Assembly (NCBI RefSeq): GCF_001194135.2
Contig: NC_068989.1
Location: forward strand, 21,963,156-21,996,499
Reading direction: 5' to 3'
From: Octopus bimaculoides
Taxonomy: Eukaryota
Length of the DNA stretch: 33,344 nucleotides
Part shown: positions 4,581 through 20,109 of the stretch, piece by piece
Position numbering within the stretch: position 1 is the first letter of the stretch
Layout: each line of letters begins with the position of its first letter
Translations under genes and position numbers: made by a program
The notes under the pieces: model-generated
Database searches by the model: none
The model's input: only the letters and a program-made list of their open reading frames with translations
Told to the model about the DNA's origin: nothing

Positions 4581-5863
4581 TTTATCTTTTATCTTTTACT
4601 TGTTTCATTCATGCTGGAGCACCACCTTGAAGAATATTTAGTCGAATGGATCGACCCCAATACTTACTTTTTAATATATATAATAATAATAATAATACAA
4701 AGAATATATATACATGTATACACACATATATGTACATACTTACATCTACATGTGTATATATACGCATATCAGGGTACAGGACGTTAGAACAATGAACTAC
4801 AGACAACGGAACGAACACATAGGAAAACGGAAAGCCACTTGGAATATTCCTTCATCAGCTGTCTCTATTCTAACCTGACGTTTCGAAGATAAGACATAAT
4901 GTACTCTAGAATAGTCTCTTTCTGAGTAGTGGAACAACTCACTACACAGAGGATTCCAAGGTGGCAAACACAAACCAAGACAGGAAAAAATGGACAGTGA
5001 AAACAACATTCAAAAGCCGTACGGCCAAACGCGAATCTGAGGTAGAACGCTAGTAGTTCGTCTTGCCTTCACAGCGGCTGGAGTGAAAAGAAAGCTGACC
5101 ACAGGTCACACGAGAACAGAGACGATGGTGGAGGGAGGAAGTGGAACAAGGAGGAAGAAACAGGAGTGTATAGCAGTGAAGTAGAAGTTAGAATAACAGA
5201 AAGAAGCAGAGCGAGACGGGGAGATGGGTAAGAAGAAAGATAGATAGGTAGATAGAGGGATAGATAGAAAGATAGAGGATGGTAGGGTGGGGAAGTGGAA
5301 CAAGGAGGAAGGGACAGTGTATAGCATTGAAGTAGAAGCCAAGATAACAGAAGGAAGCAGAGCGAGAGGGGGAGATGGATAAGAAGAAAGATAGATAGGT
5401 GGATAGAGGGATAGATAGAAAGATAGAGGAAGACAGATAGATAAATAGATAGAAAGATAGATAGATAGATAGAAAGATAGAGTCACGTCAGAATAATAAA
5501 GTAGACTTACTTGCAAAAAAGAACGTGTGCGTTCAATAATGTAATAATACAAAGAATATATATACATGTATACACACATAGATATTGTAAAGCCTGGCAC
5601 TTAGTGTATCGGTTTCTTTGTCGAACTGCTAGGTTATGGGAACATAAACACACCAGCACCGGCTGTCAAGTGATGGAGACAAACACAGACACAAGGACAC
5701 ACAGACACACACAGACACAGGCATACACACACACACGCACACACACACACATTTCAGTTTCTGTCTACCAAATCTACTCACACTTGCCCAAGGTGCCATG
5801 CAGTGGGACTGAACCTGGAACCATGTGTTTGGGAAGCAAGCTTCTTACCACACAGTCACACCT
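4581..5863 (-). mobile_element. tRNA-derived SINE (family 3, internal microsatellite) split by a ~0.9 kb insertion at ~4670-5584
   Basis: Head at ~5863-5745 (GTGTGGTAAGAAGCTTGC..GGTTCAGTCCC), CA-repeat middle, and tail pieces 5585-5680 and 4581-4670, all collinear with the copy at 27470-28055. Confidence 0.75.
4670..5584 (-). mobile_element. Non-autonomous Penelope-like (pLTR-type) insertion with 39-bp terminal direct repeat
   Basis: Identical 39-mer at 4690-4728 and 5542-5580. Minus-strand GAAACGTC (4877-4884) and CTGATGA (4852-4858) motifs. Internal 154-bp tandem duplication (gtggaacaagg at 5141 and 5295). Related copy at 13500-13763. Confidence 0.55.
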
Positions 5864-5864
5864 C

Positions 5865-6733
5865 TTTAAAAGTAAGCAAAGTGTATTGATTAATGCTCTT
5901 ACAACAACTAGTAAGGTATTAATATAATTCATTCCTTCAAAGTATTCTCCATTTGAAGCAATGCATCGGTCGAAGCAGTGCTCTTGTGAAGCGATGCCTT
6001 TTAAAGCCTCCGTCAATTTTTTCTTCACTTCTTCCACATCTGTAAATTTCGTAGCACCAGCTTTCATCACCAGTGATGACCTACGAAAAAAGATCCGGAT
6101 CAACTTCCAGCTGTTCTTTCAGTTCACGATACGCATTCAGCTGTGACTGCTTTTGAGCTTCCATGAACAAGCGAGGCACAAAAGTCTTGCTGTAACTCTT
6201 TTCATTCGCAATTCTTCGCTCAAAATTCGTTGGTAGGAATTCCAGTACACACCAGTCATATCAACAAGTTAGTCAATTGTTTGGTGACGGTCCTCCAAGA
6301 TCAGTTCATGAATTTTCATCATGTTTTCATTCGTTCGGGAGGGTCGACGATCGTCCTGTACGAAGTTGGTCTTCAAGCGACAAGTGATCATTCCTAAAGC
6401 GTGAAAACCACTCGTAAACTTGTGTTTTGCTCATGGCAACGTACCTGTAAGCTGTTTGAAGCATGACAATTGTTTCAGCCGCGTTTTTCCAAGCACAAAA
6501 CAGAATTTCACGGAAGCACGCTGTTCTTTTGTTTCGGCCATCACAAATCGTTGAACAGGGGAGAAGCACTGAAAAACAAAAACGCACCACGTGGAAGTAC
6601 GACATCAACCGACGACACCGATCGGCAGACTGGTTTCTGAGGGTCACATCAAAGGGATTCTAGCGGTGGAAGCCTAAACTACAACGGGTTTGTCCCACAA
6701 ATAAAGTTTCCGGTTACTTTTGGGTACACCCTA
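5865..6733 (-). mobile_element. mariner (Tc1/mariner) transposon, internally deleted and frameshifted
   Basis: ATG at 6541: MAETKEQRASVKFCFVLGK/NAAETIVMLQTAY..SKTQVYEWFSRF..GRSST, then FVPRL and VITGDESWCY, jumping directly to KFTDVEEVKKK..DRCIASNGEYFEG. TIR TTCCGGTTACTTTTGGGTACACCCT at 6708-6732. The other TIR survives only as AAAAGTAA at ~5868. Confidence 0.92.
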
Positions 6734-6759
6734 TGATTTACGTTCTCAGTTTAAATGAC

Positions 6760-6840
6760 CTGTAGAGCACTGGGGTCAATGTAATTGACTAGCCCTCCCA
6801 TCCAAAATTTCGGGCCTTGTGTCTATAGAAGAAAGGAATA
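6760..6840 (+). mobile_element. SINE family 2 3' fragment
   Basis: CACTGGGGTCAATGTAATTGACT..CAAAATTTCGGGCCTTGTG matches the tail of the 28900-29116 copy. Confidence 0.65.
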
Positions 6841-7544
6841 TAAATACAATTATGCAATAATTACCATCCAAGTTCTCGCATGTTTTATTCTTTATCAAAT
6901 AATTTCTATATCTTTTTATCCTTGTCAACATCTTTACTGAGTTATGCATTAAGCGTATGACAAAGCAAAAGCAATATTACATATCTAGATATTTAAACAC
7001 TAAAAAATTCCTACTAAACTTCTTTCCTCACATGACTTTTAATGTATTGTTTCCTGACCATTGACATAAGTATTAAATAGACGGAACTGTTTTTACACAA
7101 ATCTCATTAATTATACATAAAGAAGTATGTTCCGCGCAGTCTTTTCAAAACAACAGCCTTTATTATTTTATATTATTTTTATATTAATCACAGTTATTTT
7201 TACTTTATCCTGACATTTCTAATATTTCTTTCATTCAACCTCATTACTGGTCGCCATGAAACGTTCATCATGTCACAAACTTAGTCCCGTTAGATTTGAA
7301 ATTCCGCTGACATTATTGTTAACGACAACATTTCCTACTTTTCCAAGCACTTTCAGTGAAATTACTTCAAGTAATTTCCATTTCAGTCAATTGTATTGTA
7401 TATATTTATTAGATATTTATCTATTAATTATTTACCAGACATTTATTCCATTCTATTTACCCGCTATCTACATGCAGTCATTCATAAGTTTACATTTGTT
7501 TTCGATAGTTCCTAAATAATGTTTTATACAGTGTTTAAATATAA

Positions 7545-7611
7545 CCTCTGTGTGTGTGCGCTCATGTATGTGTGCGTGTGCTTGTGTGGGTGTGCGTGAG
7601 TAGATGTATAT

Positions 7612-7644
<33 letters not shown>

Positions 7645-7730
7645 TGTCTGTTTGTGCGCGCGGTGTGTCTGTTTGTTTGTGCGCGTGGTATGTCAGTCTG
7701 TTTGTCTATGTGCGCGCTCGCGCGTATGTA
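7545..7730. repeat. (GT)n-rich compound microsatellite
   Basis: Directly visible. Confidence 0.9.
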
Positions 7731-8031
7731 CACAACAGACATGGCAACTTCCAGCATCATTCACGTCCACCATATCATTCCGAAGAATCAGAAACACATA
7801 TCGCACAATTATGTTTGTGTGAATCTCAGAGTAATGATGGATTGAACAACCAGTGACTCTTTATTAACGTATGTGGTGTGGATTGTTTCTTTCATTGATC
7901 TATATCGGCGAAAAATATAACTACCGAGTGAAAAAAAAAAAAACGAAAAGTTAGTAGTTACTAGATTGTAATTCTCAATATTGTAAATGCAATTGGCCAA
8001 TGAGTTCTTCGTCCAGTAGTGGACTGAGCAT

Positions 8032-8093
8032 GTGCAGGTGTGGCTGTATGGTAAGAAGCTTGTTTCCCAACCACATGGTTCCGGGTACAGTCC
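8032..8093 (+). mobile_element. SINE family 3 head, running into an assembly gap
   Basis: GTGTGGCTGTATGGTAAGAAGCTTGTTTCCCAACCACATGGTTCCGGGTACAGTCC matches the head at 18157. Confidence 0.8.
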
Positions 8094-8360
8094 NNNNNNN
8101 NNNNNNNNNNNNNNNNNNNNNNNNNNNNNNNNNNNNNNNNNNNNNNNNNNNNNNNNNNNNNNNNNNNNNNNNNNNNNNNNNNNNNNNNNNNNNNNNNNNN
8201 NNNNNNNNNNNNNNNNNNNNNNNNNNNNNNNNNNNNNNNNNNNNNNNNNNNNNNNNNNNNNNNNNNNNNNNNNNNNNNNNNNNNNNNNNNNNNNNNNNNN
8301 NNNNNNNNNNNNNNNNNNNNNNNNNNNNNNNNNNNNNNNNNNNNNNNNNNNNNNNNNNNN

Positions 8361-8402
<42 letters not shown>

Positions 8403-8591
8403 CAATAAGAAAATGGAGAACAATATGCGGTATCCATCGACTTGCAGACAGTGTATTCCGTTGATTAATTTGTTTATTTTATAACTAAAATGACAAAAAC
8501 CACAATATACAGATGCTTATGACATACCATGTCATATTAACAATTAAGGTTACAAATATAAAGTACATTTAGCAATTGGAGAATATATACA

Positions 8592-8727
8592 GAAACTTAC
8601 AGCTGTTTCGACCTAGCGTTGGCATTCACCATTCTATCTCTATAGTTCCTCTGCGCCGGAGTAATTAGCAGATGAAAATGATGTAATGGGGGTGCATGCA
8701 TGATTCGCTAGGCCTCTTCAGAGATTC
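8592..8727 (-). ncRNA. Putative minimal type I hammerhead ribozyme, core intact
   Basis: Minus strand: GAAUCU-CUGAAGA-GGCCUAGCG-(87 nt)-CGCUAGGUC-GAAA-C-AGCU-G-UA-AGUUUC. Stem I 5/6 paired, stem II 9 bp, stem III minimal with palindromic AGCU loop, GUA cleavage triplet. Confidence 0.75.
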
Positions 8728-9170
8728 ACAAAATTCAATACAAATATAAAATAAAAAAATAAAAATAAAAATAAAAATAAGAATAAAGTAAAAATAAAAA
8801 TAAATGAAAAATGAAAATATAAAAATATAAGGCACATAAAAAGCCTACAAACAGTATATAAGGCCATATAAATAGTTTTAAACACGCCAATACACATGCC
8901 TGTGCCTGTGTACATAACCATACGTAGATATCTATGGATACAAAAGCATAGATAGATGAGTATATATGTGTGTCCATCTATCTATGGTTATGTACACAGG
9001 CACAGACATGTGTATTGGAGTGTTTAAAACTATTTATATGGTCTTATATACTGTTTGTAGGCTTTTTATGTGCCTTATATATTTATATTTTCATTTTTCA
9101 TTTATTTTTATTTTTACTTTATTCTTATTTTTATTTTTATTTTTTATTTTATATTTGTATTGAATTTTGT

Positions 9171-9306
9171 GAATCTCTGAAGAAGCCTAGCGAATCATGC
9201 ATGTACCCCCATTACATCATTTTCATCTGCTAATTACTCCGGCGCACAGGAGCTATAGAGATAGAATGGGGAATGCTAACGCTAGGCCGAACCAGCTGTA
9301 AGTTTC
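9171..9306 (+). ncRNA. Mirror copy of the hammerhead with mutated core (probably inactive)
   Basis: CTGAAGA at 9177-9183, but the G10.1-C11.1 pair is an A-C mismatch (9184/9288) and GAAA is GAAC (9289-9292). Confidence 0.6.
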
Positions 9307-10790
9307 TGTATATTCTCCAATTGCTAAATGTACTTTATATTTGTAACCTTAATTGTTAATATGACATGGTATGTCATAAGCATCTGTATATTGTGGTTTT
9401 TGACATTTAAGTTATAAAATAAACAAATTAATNNNNNNNNNNNNNNNNNNNNNNNNNNNNNNNNNNNNNNNNNNNNNNNNNNNNNNNNNNNNNNNNNNNN
9501 NNNNNNNNNNNNNNNNNNNNNNNNNNNNNNNNNNNNNNNNNNNNNNNNNNNNNNNNNNNNNNNNNNNNNNNNNNNNNNNNNNNNNNNNNNNNNNNNNNNN
9601 NNNNNNNNNNNNNNNNNNNNNNNNNNNNNNNNNNNNNNNNNNNNNNNNNNNNNNNNNNNNNNNNNNNNNNNNNNNNNNNNNNNNNNNNNNNNNNNNNNNN
9701 NNNNNNNNNNNNNNNNNNNNNNNNNNNNNNNNNNNNNNNNNNNNNNNNNNNNNNNNNNNNNNNNNNNNNNNNNNNNNNNNNNNNNNNNNNNNNNNNNNNN
9801 NNNNNNNNNNNNNNNNNNNNNNNNNNNNNNNNNNNNNNNNNNNNNNNNNNNNNNNNNNNNNNNNNNNNNNNNNNNNNNNNNNNNNNNNNNNNNNNNNNNN
9901 NNNNNNNNNNNNNNNNNNNNNNNNNNNNNNNNNNNNNNNNNNNNNNNNNNNNNNNNNNNNNNNNNNNNNNNNNNNNNNNNNNNNNNNNNNNNNNNNNNNN
10001 NNNNNNNNNNNNNNNNNNNNNNNNNNNNNNNNNNNNNNNNNNNNNNNNNNNNNNNNNNNNNNNNNNNNNNNNNNNNNNNNNNNNGAAAGACAGCTTGAGA
10101 AAGAGACAGACAGATAGACAGAGCTAGCAGTATTTTGTATTTAGTAGCTATTAGTATTTTACTTTAATGGACTATTATTACATAATACACCAGCCAGCTG
10201 AATAGTTAATAAATTCGGTATTTTAAATCAAGTGTAATGCTTTAACCATAAAGTTAAAAAAAAAAAAAAGCAGTGAGCGAAAAAAGGAGAAAAATATTAT
10301 ATATGAAGTTGCGAAAGGGCATATCTGTATTTAGAAACTAGTCTTGCTTTCAAGCTTGTCGATCATCACTAGTTTTTAGCTTCCTGGAGCCATAGGAACT
10401 CACATAATTTCTTACTATTATATGTTTGCATTATTTTTTTTATCTCATTGCGTTGGTTCGACAAAGTAAACGACTACAATTATATAATGCATAATTGATA
10501 CAATGCATTAGGATTAATTAGTAATGACTAGTTAGCAATGGTTTATGTAGTTCATTAAGTAGACGTGTTGAAATATAATTTTGCAGTGAAAAGTATTACA
10601 GTAACCGAAGACATCCATAGACATCAGTGTATCTCTCAATAGATTGTATTATTGTTGCGAGCATTCGTACATACGTACATTCATGCATACATACACGGCA
10701 CTAATACAATAAGTACAAAAATTTAAAAAGTAAGTCCTGTGATCGATTTGCTCGACTAAGCCATTCAAGATAGTCGATCAGTAAAGGAAG

Positions 10791-10897
10791 ATGCACACAC
10801 ACACACACACATACACACACACATGCACACATACACACACACACACACACATACACACACACACATGCACATATACATACATATATATATATATATA
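10791..10897. repeat. (CA)n(TA)n microsatellite next to a gap
   Basis: Directly visible. Confidence 0.9.
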
Positions 10898-11260
10898 NNN
10901 NNNNNNNNNNNNNNNNNNNNNNNNNNNNNNNNNNNNNNNNNNNNNNNNNNNNNNNNNNNNNNNNNNNNNNNNNNNNNNNNNNNNNNNNNNNNNNNNNNNN
11001 NNNNNNNNNNNNNNNNNNNNNNNNNNNNNNNNNNNNNNNNNNNNNNNNNNNNNNNNNNNNNNNNNNNNNNNNNNNNNNNNNNNNNNNNNNNNNNNNNNNN
11101 NNNNNNNNNNNNNNNNNNNNNNNNNNNNNNNNNNNNNNNNNNNNNNNNNNNNNNNNNNNNNNNNNNNNNNNNNNNNNNNNNNNNNNNNNNNNNNNNNNNN
11201 NNNNNNNNNNNNNNNNNNNNNNNNNNNNNNNNNNNNNNNNNNNNNNNNNNNNNNNNNNNT

Positions 11261-12317
11261 AATCCTTACCTTCAGTTCATCTTTGGCGTTACAAGGAGTT
11301 TTGTTGGTCTCTTACTCAACTGCACCCTTCATTTAATAATCTAGGGGGTTGGAGTCTGGGGAGCTAGATGGCCAGATGTTAGGAGTGATGTGATCACAGA
11401 AATTGTCTGACAGCTATGACTCTGTTCTCCTGCTTGTGTGGCATGGTGCAAAGTCCTGTTGCCAGATATAGGGGGTTCCAGCAGCCACCTTCTTGACCCA
11501 GGGCAGCTCTACCACCTCCAGGCACTTGATGTAGGCCTCCGTATTGAGTCTGAGGCCGTGTGGGAAGATGAACGGAGGCATAACGTCGCCATCACTAGTG
11601 ATCATTCCAAACACCATGATGATGCTTGATTTTTATCATTCTCGGTAGATGTTTTGGGGTCACGGCAAGCCAACGGTTGTTCTGCGTGTTCACCGTCTGA
11701 TCCTGGCAGAACTTTCTCGTCTGAGAAATACCAAAGCATGTTCGGCTGGAGGGAATGCTTGAGTTTGTTCAAAAGCTTCGTAGCGCGGTCTTACCTCCTG
11801 TCCTTGATGGTTTGGGATGAAAATTGGTCCTTTCTCATTTTGTATGAGGAATACCCAAAGTCTTCATGCACTACCTACCTGATAAGTAACTCAGACACTC
11901 CCATGTCCCTGGCGATGGATCTGATTGACTTGGAGAGATCGTTGTTAATCATGGCCTGGATCTCACCTACAAATTCCGTTCTTTTCTTATCAGAACGATC
12001 AGAGTGAGTTTTCCGTGCTGCCGTACCTTCGTAATCACCATTAGACTCATCCAACTCTTTCTGAATCTTCTGCATTGTCCTCAGATTGACACCCAAACAC
12101 TTTGAAATGTTCGTATTGGAGCTTCCGGCGCGAATGCCAAACAATACAGCATGTCATTTCCAAATTTTTCTGGCGGAGTGAATTGCGTCATGGTGCTATT
12201 TTTCTCACAGACGGGTGCCCAACTGACCCTACTATACTGTGTAGTCGAAAAAACAAACAAACAAACGATATGCATGCGTGAAATTAAAAATCTAAAATGG
12301 CGACAATTTACCCTGTA
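11261..12317 (-). mobile_element. DD37D (maT/Bmmar1-type) Tc1/mariner transposon, decayed
   Basis: ATG at 12191. Translation gives ..GIRAGSSNTNISKCLGV..SIRSIARDMGVSE.., WYFSDEK (D1), MVFGMITSDG, and YIWQQD-(37 aa)-NPLDY (D2 to D3 spacing counted as 37). Premature stops and frameshifts. TIR-like AAAATGGCGACAATTTACCCTG then (TA)n at ~12294-12340. The other end lies in the gap. Confidence 0.92.
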
Positions 12318-13499
12318 TATATATATATATATATATATATNNNNNNNNNNNNNNNNNNNNNNNNNNNNNNNNNNNNNNNNNNNNNNNNNNNNNNNNNNNN
12401 NNNNNNNNNNNNNNNNNNNNNNNNNNNNNNNNNNNNNNNNNNNNNNNNNNNNNNNNNNNNNNNNNNNNNNNNNNNNNNNNNNNNNNNNNNNNNNNNNNNN
12501 NNNNNNNNNNNNNNNNNNNNNNNNNNNNNNNNNNNNNNNNNNNNNNNNNNNNNNNNNNNNNNNNNNNNNNNNNNNNNNNNNNNNNNNNNNNNNNNNNNNN
12601 NNNNNNNNNNNNNNNNNNNNNNNNNNNNNNNNNNNNNNNNNNNNNNNNNNNNNNNNNNNNNNNNNNNNNNNNNNNNNNNNNNNNNNNNNNTATTTAGCGA
12701 AAAATACAGAACACGCCTAAATATGAACGCATAACCAACTTTGGTCTCAGTGCATATTTTAATTCATGATCACATACCCATCACTGGGCATATTTCAACT
12801 CAGTACTTTAGCTTTTGAGTTTTTGTATATTTATTTATTCCCCCACCCCACCCCAAAAATGAGCAATTACGTCCCCTGTCCCGAATAATAACAATCACCA
12901 ATTATCTCCCCTTAGATTTTTCTATTTCTTGATTCATTCACAAACTTCCATACAAGAACATGGACTAAAATCTTCTTAAGAAAACACGAAATTACAATAA
13001 TTTCAACGTCATGATTAGCGAAAGTGAAACCGGTTGACAAACTCATTACTCTTTCAATTATAAAATATATTAAAAAAATATGTTAAAACTATGTAAACTG
13101 TGTGCATTTTCTTTAATTTTATATATATTTTTTGCGTTACAACTAATCATGTGGGGATAATCGAAATTCTCCTCCTCCCTTTTCTTACTATATATACGTG
13201 TGTGTGGGTGCGTGTGTATATTATTCTTAAAGAAGAATGTTTTTGACAGTGACTTCGAAGTTTCGGACAGTTAAGCTGTAGTCGGACTGCGATGCATTTA
13301 AGTTAGTCTTGCCTTTATATAGTCTCTGTTGAGCTAAAATTTTCAATGCATATGTGGATTTGGATGGGGTGGCAATTTCAGATTTTTGGATGAGTTATTA
13401 AGGAGAGGTGTTTTAGAGAAATTTTTTTTATTAAATATGTTATTGCTTAGAATTTAATCATGTATCTAGAACTTTGTAAACGAGTGGGTAAGTGTTTCT

Positions 13500-13763: not shown

Positions 13764-15193
13764 NNNNNNNNNNNNNNNNNNNNNNNNNNNNNNNNNNNNN
13801 NNNNNNNNNNNNNNNNNNNNNNNNNNNNNNNNNNNNNNNNNNNNNNNNNNNNNNNNNNNNNNNNNNNNNNNNNNNNNNNNNNNNNNNNNNNNNNNNNNNN
13901 NNNNNNNNNNNNNNNNNNNNNNNNNNNNNNNNNNNNNNNNNNNNNNNNNNNNNNNNNNNNNNNNNNNNNNNNNNNNNNNNNNNNNNNNNNNNNNNNNNNN
14001 NNNNNNNNNNNNNNNNNNNNNNNNNNNNNNNNNNNNNNNNNNNNNNNNNNNNNNNNNNNNNNNNNNNNNNNNNNNNNNNNNNNNNNNNNNNNNNNNNNNN
14101 NNNNNNNNNNNNNNNNNNNNNNNNNNNNNNNNNNNNNNNNNNNNNNNNNNNNNNNNNNNNNNNNNNNNNNNNNNNNNNNNNNNNNNNNNNNNNNNNNNNN
14201 NNNNNNNNNNNNNNNNNNNNNNNNNNNNNNNNNNNNNNNNNNNNNNNNNNNNNNNNNNNNNNNNNNNNNNNNNNNNNNNNNNNNNNNNNNNNNNNNNNNN
14301 NNNNNNNNNNNNNNNNNNNNNNNNNNNNNNNNNNNNNNNNNNNNNNNNNNNNNNNNNNNNNNNNNNNNNNNNNNNNNNNNNNNNNNNNNNNNNNNNNNNN
14401 NNNNNNNNNNNNNNNNNNNNNNNNNNNNNNNNNNNNNNNNNNNNNNNNNNNNNNNNNNNNNNNNNNNNNNNNNNNNNNNNNNNNNNNNNNNNNNNNNNNN
14501 NNNNNNNNNNNNNNNNNNNNNNNNNNNNNNNNNNNNNNNNNNNNNNNNNNNNNNNNNNNNNNNNNNNNNNNNNNNNNNNNNNNNNNNNNNNNNNNNNNNN
14601 NNNNNNNNNNNNNNNNNNNNNNNNNNNNNNNNNNNNNNNNNNNNNNNATTTGTAGCAGACGCTCTCTCGACATCGTTCACACGCGCCTGACTCACGCTCA
14701 GAAGTTACAGCCCGAGTTGTTATCTATAATCGTAAAAATGAAAAGAAATTCAAATTCAATGTTATCTTGAAACAACAAATTTCTATAGAGATTAGGATTT
14801 AAATTCCAATCTATGAAAAGTTTCCGTTCTACAATATTCTTAAAAGAACGAAAAAATATTCAGCAACTCGGGCTAATAAGAACGAGCCTGGTAGGTGTAA
14901 AAGACTAACTAGCATCTCTTGTAAAGTGTACAGGCGACAGTCAGATCAATGATTGTTTGTTGTGCACTCCGCTGTCGTTATTCGATTGCTGTTATTCTGT
15001 GCGTCTGTGTGTAAAGGTCAGTTGTGTTTTGCTGGGTTACTTTATTTTTACCCTTAACTTAGAAATGGAGAAAAACATAGTGCTCGATATAAAAAAATAA
15101 GCCATTTGGAGTTAGAAATAAAGCGAAAAAACGTGAAATTCTTCGAGCTGCATGGGACTTATGCAAAATCTGTGATGAGCCCGAGTGACGCTG

Positions 15194-17850: not shown

Positions 17851-18156
17851 CTTAGCTTACAAACATGTCCCTTTTGAGTACGTCACATATTTTGCGTTTC
17901 CGTCTCAGCCGGAATTGACTGAAGAGTCTTTCATACGGTCTAATGTGGAATAAACACCATTAATTGATACCTCAAAGATGTGCTCCAGTATGACGTCGAG
18001 AAAAATGCCGAACAAAGTGTAGGAAAGTACACAGCTCGTTTCACAACACAGCTGTAGATGTTGAAGGCCCCTGAAGAAGAGTGTAATACATGCGCGCGTG
18101 TGTGTATATTTACATACATATGTGTGTGGATATATATATATATATATATATATATA

Positions 18157-18337
18157 GGCGCAGGAATGGCTGTGTGGTAAGTAACTCGCTTACCAACCAC
18201 ATGGTTCCGAGTTCAGTACCACTGTGTGACATCTTGGGCAAGTGTCTTCTACTATAGCCTCGGGCCGACCAAAGCCTTGTGAGTGGATTTGGTAGACGGA
18301 AACTGAAAGAAGCCCGTGGTGTATATATATATATATG

Positions 18338-18380
<43 letters not shown>
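18157..18380 (+). mobile_element. SINE family 3 (head and body plus (TA)n(GT)n; tail absent)
   Basis: GGCGCAGGAATGGCTGTGTGGTAAG..GGTTCCGAGTTCAGTACC..GGCCGACCAAAGCCTTGTGAGTGGATTTGGTAGACGGAAACTGAAAGAAGCCCG, matching the minus-strand copies at 27890-28055 and 5745-5863. Confidence 0.9.
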
Positions 18381-19167: not shown

Positions 19168-19207
<40 letters not shown>

Positions 19208-20109
19208 NNNNNNNNNNNNNNNNNNNNNNNNNNNNNNNNNNNNNNNNNNNNNNNNNNNNNNNNNNNNNNNNNNNNNNNNNNNNNNNNNNNNNNNNNNNNN
19301 NNNNNNNNNNNNNNNNNNNNNNNNNNNNNNNNNNNNNNNNNNNNNNNNNNNNNNNNNNNNNNNNNNNNNNNNNNNNNNNNNNNNNNNNNNNNNNNNNNNN
19401 NNNNNNNNNNNNNNNNNNNNNNNNNNNNNNNNNNNNNNNNNNNNNNNNNNNNNNNNNNNNNNNNNNNNNNNNNNATATATATGGATGTATACACACACAT
19501 ATATATATTCTTTTGCTTTACGTTTTGTTTATTGTCGCTAGTAAATATTGTCTATGTGGCAACAAACATCGTGGTAATTGAATACGGTCACGTGTTTCTG
19601 GATTGTACTGGAATCGATCGTATCTATTATCAAGTAAAACGTGACGGAGGAGTCAAATTCCTAAATGCAGAGTTAGACCGCTGTCATAATCATTATACCC
19701 AGTGGTATTAGACAAATATTCCCTGTTGGATAAATCGTGTGACATTATTGATTTTAACTAATGGATTGAAGGTGTCGAAATTATGTCAACCTACGCATGT
19801 ATGTGTTTCGTTGTTTGTATGTGTATGTATATAAGACAGATCGATAGATAGAAGTTGATGGAAAGGAGAGGAAAAAGAGAGAGAGAGAGAGAAGTATGGA
19901 TGCAAGAGGGCTACGTCATGAAATTAGATTCATATAGAGTGTTTATGTATGGTTTTTGTGTGGTGTAATTGTATGCGATGGGATTAGGGCGTTGGCTTTT
20001 TTATTGAGCAAATACAGAGAGGTTGCTTAATATTAAGGTGTTTCACAGAGCTGGTAGATAGAGTTTGGTGGGACGTTACTGATATTCATGTACTATAGAA
20101 TATTTTTTA

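What the first reader, a model, noticed from the sequence alone, without database searches (positions are those of the whole stretch)
8592..8727. Apparently intact minimal hammerhead ribozyme with an 87-nt loop II in a pLTR-like sequence
Seen: every catalytic-core element is present in order on the minus strand. These are CUGAAGA, a 9-bp stem II (GGCCUAGCG/CGCUAGGUC), GAAA, a C-G closed palindromic AGCU tetraloop, a GUA triplet (predicted cut between 8598 and 8597) and a 5/6-bp stem I. A T-rich tract lies upstream and AATAAA about 110 nt downstream. Established: Penelope-like element pseudo-LTRs carry minimal type I hammerheads with a very short stem III and palindromic loop 3, thought to need dimerisation to cleave. 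Inference: this is a PLE- or retrozyme-type ribozyme, and the long loop II is unusual. No RT ORF is attached, so it could belong to a non-autonomous, ribozyme-only retroelement family in octopus.
Basis: partly seen in the sequence, partly recalled or inferred. Interest (0 to 1): 0.85.

Follow-up and report, generated by a model that had tools for sequence, protein, structure and literature searches.

The report
Hammerhead ribozyme relic in octopus palindrome
The sequence does contain a complete self-cleaving hammerhead RNA motif, but it sits in one arm of a 1-kb inverted repeat whose other arm holds a broken copy, so it is most likely a decaying fragment of an ordinary Penelope-type jumping gene.

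Summary
On the minus strand at 8727-8592 every type I hammerhead element is present at the stated coordinates. It is the only such motif in the window and is far beyond chance. Rfam's Hammerhead_1 model aligns full-length to exactly this interval, but below threshold (15.3 vs 34 bits) because of the 87-nt loop II.

The finding as written omits the main context. The stretch 8464-9432 is one near-perfect palindrome. The right arm (9171-9306, + strand) carries a second copy with two changes at conserved hammerhead positions (G10.1>A, A15.1>C). The hammerhead segment has diverged faster than its flanks. No RT or GIY-YIG coding sequence, tandem repeat or further copy exists in the window. The element abuts a (TA)n tract and assembly gaps.

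Divergent (head-to-head) inverted copies are typical of Penelope-like element (PLE) insertions. I saw hammerheads on opposite strands in a sea-star PLE locus and a head-to-head truncated copy in a beetle PLE locus.

Best reading (about 0.6): a head-to-head pair of 5'-truncated PLE-type 3' ends, now decaying. The ribozyme would work only as a dimer. A "ribozyme-only retroelement family" is untested, because no octopus genome could be searched. Interest is modest.

The parts
8592..8727 (-). Complete type I hammerhead ribozyme motif (136 nt) in the left arm
   Evidence: Sequence reading; own descriptor, the only hit in the window; Rfam Hammerhead_1 full-length sub-threshold alignment, 15.3 bits
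8722..8727 (-). Stem I 5' strand, GAAUCU
   Evidence: Pairs 5 of 6 with AGUUUC at 8597-8592
8715..8721 (-). Core box CUGAAGA (C3-A9)
8706..8714 (-). Stem II 5' strand, GGCCUAGCG (G10.1 = 8714)
   Evidence: 9 consecutive pairs with 8618-8610
8619..8705 (-). 87-nt loop II, predicted to extend helix II as a long imperfect hairpin
   Evidence: Fold. The stability of the whole 151-nt fold is not unusual (z = -0.65).
8610..8618 (-). Stem II 3' strand, CGCUAGGUC (C11.1 = 8610)
8606..8609 (-). Core box GAAA (G12-A15.1)
8599..8606 (-). Helix III, ACAGCUGU: an 8-nt perfect palindrome (A15.1-U16.1 and C-G closing AGCU)
   Evidence: Two copies are predicted to form an 8-bp intermolecular duplex of -13.1 kcal/mol. 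The 18-nt segment alone does not fold.
8597..8598 (-). Predicted cleavage site, after A17 (8598) and before A1.1 (8597)
   Evidence: Position follows from the hammerhead consensus. Cleavage was not tested.
8592..8597 (-). Stem I 3' strand, AGUUUC
9171..9306 (+). Second, degenerate hammerhead copy in the right arm. It differs at 8 of 136 positions, including G10.1>A (9184), U11.2>C (9287) and A15.1>C (9292).
   Evidence: Alignment. No Hammerhead hit at E<=10 in a 151-nt Rfam scan.
8402..8929 (-). Left arm of the palindrome. Reading 5' to 3' on the minus strand: unique sequence, T-rich tract, hammerhead, then a roughly 190-nt 3' region. Homology to the right arm can be followed only from 8464, because the right arm is cut by a gap.
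   Evidence: Self-BLAST: 8464-9432 against its reverse complement, 92% over 978 columns; the repeat finder; MAFFT alignment
8930..8975 (.). Roughly 46-nt non-palindromic spacer at the centre of the palindrome
   Evidence: I2: arms 8749-8929 and 8976-9156, 46 nt between
8976..9432 (+). Right arm of the palindrome, cut off by the N gap that starts at 9433
8742..8827 (-). Degenerate (TTTTTA)n tract upstream of the hammerhead; its mirror lies at 9080-9156
   Evidence: TRF
8361..8401 (.). (TA)20 microsatellite abutting the outer (3') end of the left arm, followed by the N gap 8094-8360
   Evidence: (TA)n is reported as a preferred PLE (Naiad) target in PMC8557442. (TA)n tracts are also common in this window.

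Best explanation
The 136-nt motif is a real hammerhead ribozyme sequence of the minimal type I kind, with a short palindromic helix III. It was inherited from a Penelope-like element (PLE) or a PLE-mobilised retroelement.

The locus is a head-to-head pair of 5'-truncated copies of that element's HHR-bearing 3' region. Each arm is at least about 520 bp, and the arms are separated by a 46-nt spacer. The pair lies next to a (TA)n microsatellite. It has no coding part and is decaying neutrally: the left arm still has the full catalytic consensus, and the right arm has lost it.

In an active source element the ribozyme would cut the transcript after GUA. It would work only when two copies pair through the ACAGCUGU palindrome to build an 8-bp helix III, which needs tandem copies or two transcripts. 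At this locus that is unlikely. The two copies are on opposite strands, so a read-through transcript would fold into a roughly 470-bp hairpin instead.

Shown here: the motif, the palindrome, the degenerate second copy, the absence of RT/EN, and the octopus-like repeat content. Inferred: the PLE origin, the dimer mechanism and the loss of function.
For: - The motif is complete and far beyond chance. Features that are not needed merely to spot a core are also present: the G10.1-C11.1 pair, a long helix II (9 bp), a short helix I (5 of 6) and a palindromic helix III. These are the signatures listed for PLE min-HHRs in PMC4209133.
- Rfam Hammerhead_1 aligns full-length to the exact interval.
- The region is a palindrome of 92% identity with the two copies reading outward from the centre. 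[quoted passage not shown] PMC4209133 reports dual min-HHRs 100-700 bp apart on opposite strands in S. mansoni. Here the two motifs are 443 nt apart.
- Control loci. A Patiria miniata PLE locus (L003) has an RT-EN ORF homology at 6736-8070. My descriptor finds a min-HHR at 8341-8386 (+) and an inverted 262-bp copy carrying the same HHR at 5741-5696 (-), which is the same outward-facing geometry. A Tenebrio PLE (L004) has an inverted 5'-truncated copy head-to-head with the full copy. Rfam detects nothing at the Patiria HHR even at E<=10, so a sub-threshold Rfam score is not evidence against.
- The predicted 8-bp intermolecular helix III is -13.1 kcal/mol, against no local fold for the monomer. 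The monomer's minimum-free-energy fold sequesters GAAAC with GUUUC.
- Octopus genomes carry many PLE families (PMC13282606). The window is octopus-like.
Against: - No PLE coding sequence is in the window. No homology of the arm to any known PLE could be tested.
- No other family copy was found anywhere I could search, so there is no evidence of conservation or covariation.
- An 87-nt loop II is outside published PLE-HHR descriptors. The usual unpaired nucleotide between A9 and 10.1 is absent.
- The Rfam score is well below gathering, and E = 0.38 even in the 151-nt search.
- The hammerhead segment differs between the arms more than the flanks do: 8/136 against 6/302, Fisher p = 0.04. So there is no constraint at this locus.
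- (TA)n tracts are frequent in this window, so that adjacency is weak evidence.
- The A-rich tract on the opposite strand could instead be read as the tail of an element running the other way.
Confidence: 0.6

Rival explanations
1. The motif is a chance hammerhead look-alike inside an unrelated foldback or long-TIR DNA element, or a local inverted duplication. On this reading the palindrome is the real feature and the ribozyme consensus is coincidental.
For: The Rfam score is sub-threshold. The 87-nt loop II is atypical. The second arm lacks the core. The motif shows no constraint between the arms. There is no RT or EN and no tandem arrangement. The element abuts a TA-rich target, as many DNA transposons do.
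Against: The full feature set is expected well under once per genome by chance (and my analytic estimate). At both core positions where the arms differ, the same arm keeps the consensus base. That is what decay from an intact ancestor predicts. G10.1-C11.1 and the 8-nt palindromic helix III are specific signatures of PLE-type and dimer-type hammerheads (PMC4209133).
Confidence: 0.15
2. One reading: this is a copy of a non-autonomous, ribozyme-only retroelement family (retrozyme-like, mobilised by PLEs) whose hammerhead carries a conserved long helix II.
For: The core is intact with no ORF attached. Animal non-LTR retrozymes are reported to be PLE-pLTR derivatives with many dispersed monomers. 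Octopus genomes hold many unclassified short retroelements.
Against: The window has no tandem direct repeat and no second unit in the same orientation. Published retrozyme hammerheads are canonical, with loop-loop contacts. No related sequence was retrieved from any collection. The local copy pair is diverging freely.
Confidence: 0.15
3. The palindrome is an assembly artefact: two diverged genomic copies of one repeat joined back to back in a small contig between gaps. On this reading the hammerhead exists but its inverted context does not.
For: The 1,072-bp stretch lies between two N gaps (8094-8360 and 9433-10084) and consists almost entirely of the palindrome. PMC8557442 notes that PLE structures upset short-read assemblies.
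Against: The arms differ by about 3% in substitutions, plus indels and a poorly aligned centre (92% overall). There is a distinct 46-nt spacer. This does not look like a collapsed or chimeric perfect hairpin. Inverted copies are a genuine PLE feature, as seen in two chromosome-level control loci.
Confidence: 0.07

Closest known systems
Minimal type I hammerhead ribozymes of Penelope-like element pseudo-LTRs (Cervera & de la Pena 2014, PMC4209133; Lunse et al. 2017, cited in PMC6765202)
   Same: Type I topology and full core. G10.1-C11.1 pair. Long helix II and short helix I. Very short helix III with a palindromic sequence, which implies action as a dimer. Copies on opposite strands a few hundred bp apart. 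The host genome is rich in PLEs.
   Different: Loop II is 87 nt, against a few nt in published examples (6 nt in the Patiria control). There is no unpaired nucleotide between A9 and 10.1. No RT-EN ORF or direct pLTR lies nearby. No family alignment is available.
Metazoan non-LTR retrozymes (Cervera & de la Pena 2020, PMC7229834; Li et al. 2026, bioRxiv 10.64898/2026.07.22.740005)
   Same: Non-coding, AT-rich unit a few hundred bp long that carries a type I hammerhead. Thought to derive from PLE pLTRs. Monomeric dead copies are common.
   Different: Retrozymes are defined by tandem direct repeats and by canonical hammerheads with loop 1-loop 2 contacts. Here there is an inverted pair, no tandem repeat, and no recognisable tertiary contacts.
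Newt and salamander satellite hammerheads (HHR_Amex1 type)
   Same: [quoted passage not shown]
   Different: Those have a 4-bp helix II with conserved loops and lie in 330-350-bp tandem satellites.
Discontinuous hammerhead of mammalian Clec2 3' UTRs
   Same: It shows that a hammerhead can tolerate a very long insertion in one helix.
   Different: There the insertion is in helix I of a type III motif within an mRNA. It is not in helix II of a transposon-borne type I motif.

Membership tests
Hammerhead ribozyme, type I (Rfam RF00163) | Conserved core: CUGANGA, GAAA, and a cleavage triplet NUH | tested here: met
   CUGAAGA 8721-8715, GAAA 8609-8606, GUA 8600-8598
Hammerhead ribozyme, type I (Rfam RF00163) | Three helices around the core with helix I open, plus the G10.1-C11.1 and A15.1-U16.1 pairs | tested here: met
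   Stem I 5 of 6 pairs, stem II 9 bp, helix III 2 bp plus a tetraloop
Hammerhead ribozyme, type I (Rfam RF00163) | Score at or above Rfam's curated gathering cut-off | tested here: not met
   15.3 bits against 34. No hit at gathering. The loss is mostly due to the loop II insertion. A genuine PLE-linked min-HHR control scored nothing at all, so this cut-off does not discriminate for this subclass.
Hammerhead ribozyme, type I (Rfam RF00163) | Conservation of the core and covariation of the helices across related copies | tested here: inconclusive
   Only two copies exist. The second has G10.1>A and A15.1>C, both disruptive, and U11.2>C, which turns a G-U into a G-C. No further copies could be retrieved.
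Hammerhead ribozyme, type I (Rfam RF00163) | Self-cleavage at the predicted site | not testable with these tools
   Needs in vitro transcription or RNA end mapping.
PLE pseudo-LTR minimal hammerhead | Lies in a terminal repeat flanking an RT-GIY-YIG ORF | tested here: not met
   No RVT or GIY-YIG in any open frame of 70 aa or more. A PLE probe run by tblastn was negative. Caveats: 2.9 kb of the window is N, and most genomic PLE-HHRs are solo truncated copies (PMC4209133).
PLE pseudo-LTR minimal hammerhead | Long helix II (6-8 bp), short helix I (4-5 bp), G10.1-C11.1 | tested here: met
   9 bp, 5 of 6 pairs, and G8714-C8610
PLE pseudo-LTR minimal hammerhead | Palindromic positions 15.2-16.2 and loop 3, allowing a dimeric extended helix III | tested here: met
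   ACAGCUGU is a perfect palindrome. The predicted intermolecular duplex is -13.1 kcal/mol.
PLE pseudo-LTR minimal hammerhead | Unpaired nucleotide between A9 and 10.1 | tested here: not met
   G8714 pairs directly with C8610. No alternative register gives a bulge.
PLE pseudo-LTR minimal hammerhead | Compact loop 2 | tested here: not met
   87 nt here, against 6 nt in the Patiria control.
PLE pseudo-LTR minimal hammerhead | PLE-style insertion architecture: 5' truncation, an adjacent inverted copy, and a microsatellite target | tested here: met
   Head-to-head arms with a 46-nt spacer and a (TA)20 flank. The same geometry is seen in L003 and L004. The right end is hidden in a gap.
Non-LTR retrozyme | Tandem direct repeats, each with a hammerhead | tested here: not met
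   Self-BLAST and TRF show no direct repeat of the unit.
Non-LTR retrozyme | Expression as circular or linear monomer RNAs | not testable with these tools
   Needs RNA data.
Foldback / long-TIR DNA transposon | Long terminal inverted repeats bounded by target-site duplications, in multiple copies | tested here: inconclusive
   Long inverted arms are present. The right terminus is in a gap and no other copy is available.

The most novel reading that the evidence does not exclude
Cephalopods may carry a distinct subclass of transposon-borne type I hammerheads in which helix II is extended by a conserved hairpin of about 100 nt. On this reading the subclass spreads as a short non-coding element mobilised by PLEs, and the left arm here is a still-competent copy.
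Probability: 0.1. Interest if true: 0.55.

Novelty: new variant of a known kind. Interest (0 to 1): 0.3.

Why it matters
If the family exists and conserves the long helix II, it would extend the known structural range of PLE and retrozyme hammerheads. It would also add cephalopods to the animals in which these ribozymes have been examined; my one literature search found no paper that links hammerheads with octopus.

As it stands, the locus is an ordinary example of a very widespread class, with thousands of PLE hammerheads per genome in many animals. Its main use is for annotation. It flags a PLE-type head-to-head insertion relic and a roughly 470-bp inverted repeat that could yield hairpin RNA.

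Tried and rejected
- Rfam at gathering over the whole window found nothing. A 701-nt E<=10 scan showed only weak miRNA-like hits caused by the hairpin at the palindrome centre.
- tRNA/SINE origin: ARAGORN found no tRNA in the window, and Rfam gave no tRNA hit.
- Search for family copies. Self-BLAST of the window found only the mirror arm and (TA)n. A composite query of all short open frames across the arm against 5.8 billion proteins gave no hit. Exact-pattern scans of viral contigs and of metagenome contigs, twice, gave no hit. Exact-ORF look-ups for six window ORFs, meant to find an independent assembly of the locus, found none on record. Two octopus loci fetched through a LINE homologue held no arm homologue.
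- Attempt to obtain an octopus PLE for direct comparison. A PLE RT-EN probe that I wrote from memory, used only as bait, retrieved 4,500 real PLE proteins. None of the 120 listed was from octopus. I used two of them as control loci instead.
- Supplementary files of the two key PLE papers are not held. Lunse et al. 2017 is not held.
- Coding potential of the arm: only low-complexity open frames.

Full report
**1. The observation**

- GAAUCU (8727-8722)
- CUGAAGA (8721-8715)
- GGCCUAGCG (8714-8706)
- an 87-nt loop (8705-8619)
- CGCUAGGUC (8618-8610)
- GAAA (8609-8606)
- C-AGCU-G, then U (8605-8599)
- A17 (8598)
- AGUUUC (8597-8592)

Stem II has nine consecutive pairs, one of them G-U. Stem I has five of six. 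Helix III is A-U plus C-G around AGCU, so ACAGCUGU is an 8-nt perfect palindrome. The predicted cut lies between 8598 and 8597. The T-rich tract is a degenerate (TTTTTA)n at 8742-8827. AATAAA lies at 8478-8473.

**2. Is it more than chance?**

A descriptor I wrote finds this as the only hit on either strand of the 33-kb window. It requires CUGANGA, a stem II of at least 4 bp with a loop of up to 120 nt, GAAA, a short helix III, UH, and a stem I with at least 4 of 6 pairs.

In 300 dinucleotide-preserving shuffles of the window, the loose descriptor gives 0.23 hits per window. Requiring stem II >= 6 bp and stem I >= 5/6 gives 0.003. Requiring stem II >= 9 bp gives none. From base composition I estimate the full feature set, including the palindromic helix III, at roughly 4e-7 to 4e-6 per window. 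That is below one per octopus-sized genome. This last figure is inference, not a simulation.

Rfam finds nothing at gathering or in a 701-nt relaxed scan. In a 151-nt scan, Hammerhead_1 (RF00163) aligns over its whole length to exactly 8592-8727 on the minus strand. The score is 15.3 bits against a gathering score of 34, with E = 0.38. All core positions match, and Rfam's alignment places an 83-nt insertion in loop 2. On its own this is not significant, but it is the only match and it coincides with the hand-derived structure.

**3. What the finding omitted**

The stretch between the two assembly gaps (8361-9432) is almost entirely one palindrome. The interval 8464-9432 matches its own reverse complement at 92% over 978 columns. 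The arms are 8464-8929 and 8976-9432, with a spacer of about 46 nt. The right arm is cut by the N run at 9433. The left arm continues as unique sequence to 8402 and then meets (TA)20 and the N run 8094-8360.

Each arm, read outward from the centre, contains unique sequence, the T-rich tract, the hammerhead, and a 3' region of about 190 nt. The right arm therefore carries a second hammerhead copy on the plus strand (9171-9306).

That copy differs at 8 of 136 positions:
- G10.1>A, which breaks the conserved G10.1-C11.1 pair.
- A15.1>C, which turns GAAA into GAAC and breaks A15.1-U16.1.
- U11.2>C, which turns a G-U into a G-C.
- Five changes in loop II. Two break predicted pairs and one is a C-G to U-G change.

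Rfam gives no hammerhead hit for this copy even at E<=10.

Substitutions between the arms are 8/136 in the hammerhead segment against 6/302 in the flanks (odds ratio 3.1, p = 0.04). The hammerhead segment is also the GC-rich part, at 46% against 25%. So nothing has protected the ribozyme since the two arms arose. At both core positions where the arms differ, it is the left arm that keeps the consensus base. That fits decay from an intact ancestor better than chance assembly of a core.

**4. Surroundings**

No open frame of 70 aa or more in the window matches reverse transcriptase or GIY-YIG. The only Pfam hit is a weak Mos1 HTH. A PLE RT-EN probe finds nothing by tblastn. There is no tRNA, no direct or tandem repeat of the unit, and no further copy in the window.

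Other transposon remnants are present. Read from the translations, there are mariner-like pieces at 5774-6647 and 11417-12153 on the minus strand. A LINE endonuclease ORF lies at 22906-23409 on the minus strand. Its best homologue is an Octopus bimaculoides protein with an Exo_endo_phos domain, at 68% identity. The window shares many interspersed repeats, at 72-94% identity, with a 20-kb O. bimaculoides chromosome segment. An octopus origin is therefore well supported.

**5. Comparison with real PLE loci**

Using PLE proteins retrieved, I fetched two loci.

In the sea star Patiria miniata (L003), RT-EN homology spans 6736-8070 on the plus strand. My descriptor finds a min-HHR 271 nt downstream (8341-8386, +). 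It also finds the same HHR on the minus strand at 5741-5696, inside a 262-bp inverted copy that is 98.9% identical. The two ribozymes face outward, as in the octopus palindrome. That HHR has a 6-bp helix II, a 6-nt loop 2, a bulged U after A9, and ACGU as helix III. Rfam does not detect it at gathering or at E<=10. A low Rfam score is therefore normal for this subclass.

In Tenebrio (L004), a 1,031-bp inverted 5'-truncated copy lies head-to-head with the full copy. No canonical core was found there. That would fit the atypical variants that PMC4209133 describes in Drosophila and mosquitoes.

The literature says the same. PLE insertions are highly 5'-truncated and often have an inverted truncated copy immediately adjacent. 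They upset short-read assemblies, and Naiads favour (TA)n (PMC8557442). Dual min-HHRs 100-700 bp apart on opposite strands occur in S. mansoni, and most genomic min-HHRs are solo remnants of truncated PLEs (PMC4209133).

**6. Mechanism**

As a monomer the RNA is predicted not to adopt the hammerhead fold. The minimum-free-energy structure keeps stem II and extends it through loop II. However, it pairs GAAAC with GUUUC, which removes the core, helix III and stem I. Forcing the hammerhead pairs costs 5.9 kcal/mol. The overall fold is not unusually stable (z = -0.65).

Two copies can pair through ACAGCUGU to give an 8-bp helix III (-13.1 kcal/mol). This is the dimer mechanism established for newt, viroid and PLE hammerheads (PMC6155905, PMC6765202, PMC7229834). 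In a source element with tandem copies, this would release unit-length RNA cut after GUA.

At this locus the second copy is on the other strand and is mutated. A transcript crossing the centre would instead form a hairpin of about 470 bp. I therefore regard the local copy as a relic with an intact consensus, not as a working ribozyme. This is inference.

**7. Classification and novelty**

The motif meets the sequence and topology definition of a type I hammerhead. It shares the specific signatures of PLE min-HHRs: G10.1-C11.1, a long helix II, a short helix I and a palindromic helix III.

It fails three features of that subclass as published. No ORF is linked to it. No nucleotide is bulged after A9. 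Loop 2 is 87 nt long. It also fails the defining tandem arrangement of non-LTR retrozymes.

I therefore describe it as working like a PLE-type dimeric hammerhead and most probably derived from one, but as a variant and not a proven member. The idea of ribozyme-only non-autonomous elements derived from PLEs is already published (PMC7229834; bioRxiv 10.64898/2026.07.22.740005). It is not supported by anything at this locus.

**8. Limits**

No eukaryotic genome collection was available. I could not count copies, test linkage to octopus PLEs, or measure covariation. Every indirect route failed. The right end of the structure and any neighbouring PLE body may lie in the gaps.

Arm divergence, counting substitutions in the alignable part, is about 3%. 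On the calibration quoted for O. vulgaris (PMC13282606), that would put the inverted pair at a few million years old. This assumes no gene conversion between the arms and is only a rough inference.

Noticed in passing
window 8894-9000: Weak sub-threshold Rfam hits to several miRNA precursor families on both strands (22-25 bits against gathering scores of 65-101). They coincide with the centre of the palindrome. They most likely reflect only the hairpin that any palindrome centre forms.
   Followed up: partly
window 5774-6647 (-) and 11417-12153 (-): Remnants of mariner/Mos1-type transposases. There is a weak Pfam HTH_48 hit at about 6330-6659. The translation at 11417-11632 shows a DDE-like motif ('QQDFAPCHTS').
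   Followed up: partly
window 22339-23409 (-): LINE-type apurinic-endonuclease ORF fragment. It is 68% identical to Octopus bimaculoides LOC106873154 (Exo_endo_phos). A Logan contig (L002) from run SRR11869384 carries a related copy.
   Followed up: partly
window 5782-5859, 8031-8093, 18149-18346, 27893-28055; L001 5117-5286, 17938-18120, 18624-18761: One short interspersed repeat family recurs at least four times in the window and three times in a random 20-kb O. bimaculoides segment, at 76-87% identity. One copy ends at the gap just left of the palindrome. It is probably an abundant octopus SINE.
   Followed up: no
window 26587-26840 vs L001 7628-7882: A 255-bp repeat that is 94.5% identical between the window and an unrelated O. 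bimaculoides locus. This points to a young, recently active repeat family.
   Followed up: no
window N runs 8094-8360, 9433-10084, 10898-11259, 12341-12690, 13764-14647, 19208-19474, 27752-27844, 32690-32709: There are eight assembly gaps, 2,895 N in all. At least five of them are bordered directly by (TA)n-type tracts (for example 8361-8401, 10871-10897, 12316-12340, 19172-19200 and 32710-32748). The assembly appears to break at microsatellites, so sequence next to the palindrome is missing.
   Followed up: no
L003 5696-5741 (-) and 8341-8386 (+); L003 5539-5798 vs 8284-8545: A Patiria miniata PLE carries identical minimal hammerheads on opposite strands inside 262-bp inverted repeats that flank the RT-EN ORF. 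The hammerhead has a 6-bp helix II, a 6-nt loop, a bulged U and an ACGU helix III. Rfam does not detect it even at E<=10.
   Followed up: yes
L004 4755-5785 vs 6991-8021: A Tenebrio molitor PLE has a 100% identical inverted 5'-truncated copy lying head-to-head with the full copy. No canonical CUGANGA...CGAAA core was found in this locus.
   Followed up: partly
window 8592-8727 vs 9171-9306: The hammerhead segment is the GC-rich island of each arm (46% against 25%). It has diverged about three times faster between the arms than the AT-rich flanks have (8/136 against 6/302). The cause is unknown.
   Followed up: partly
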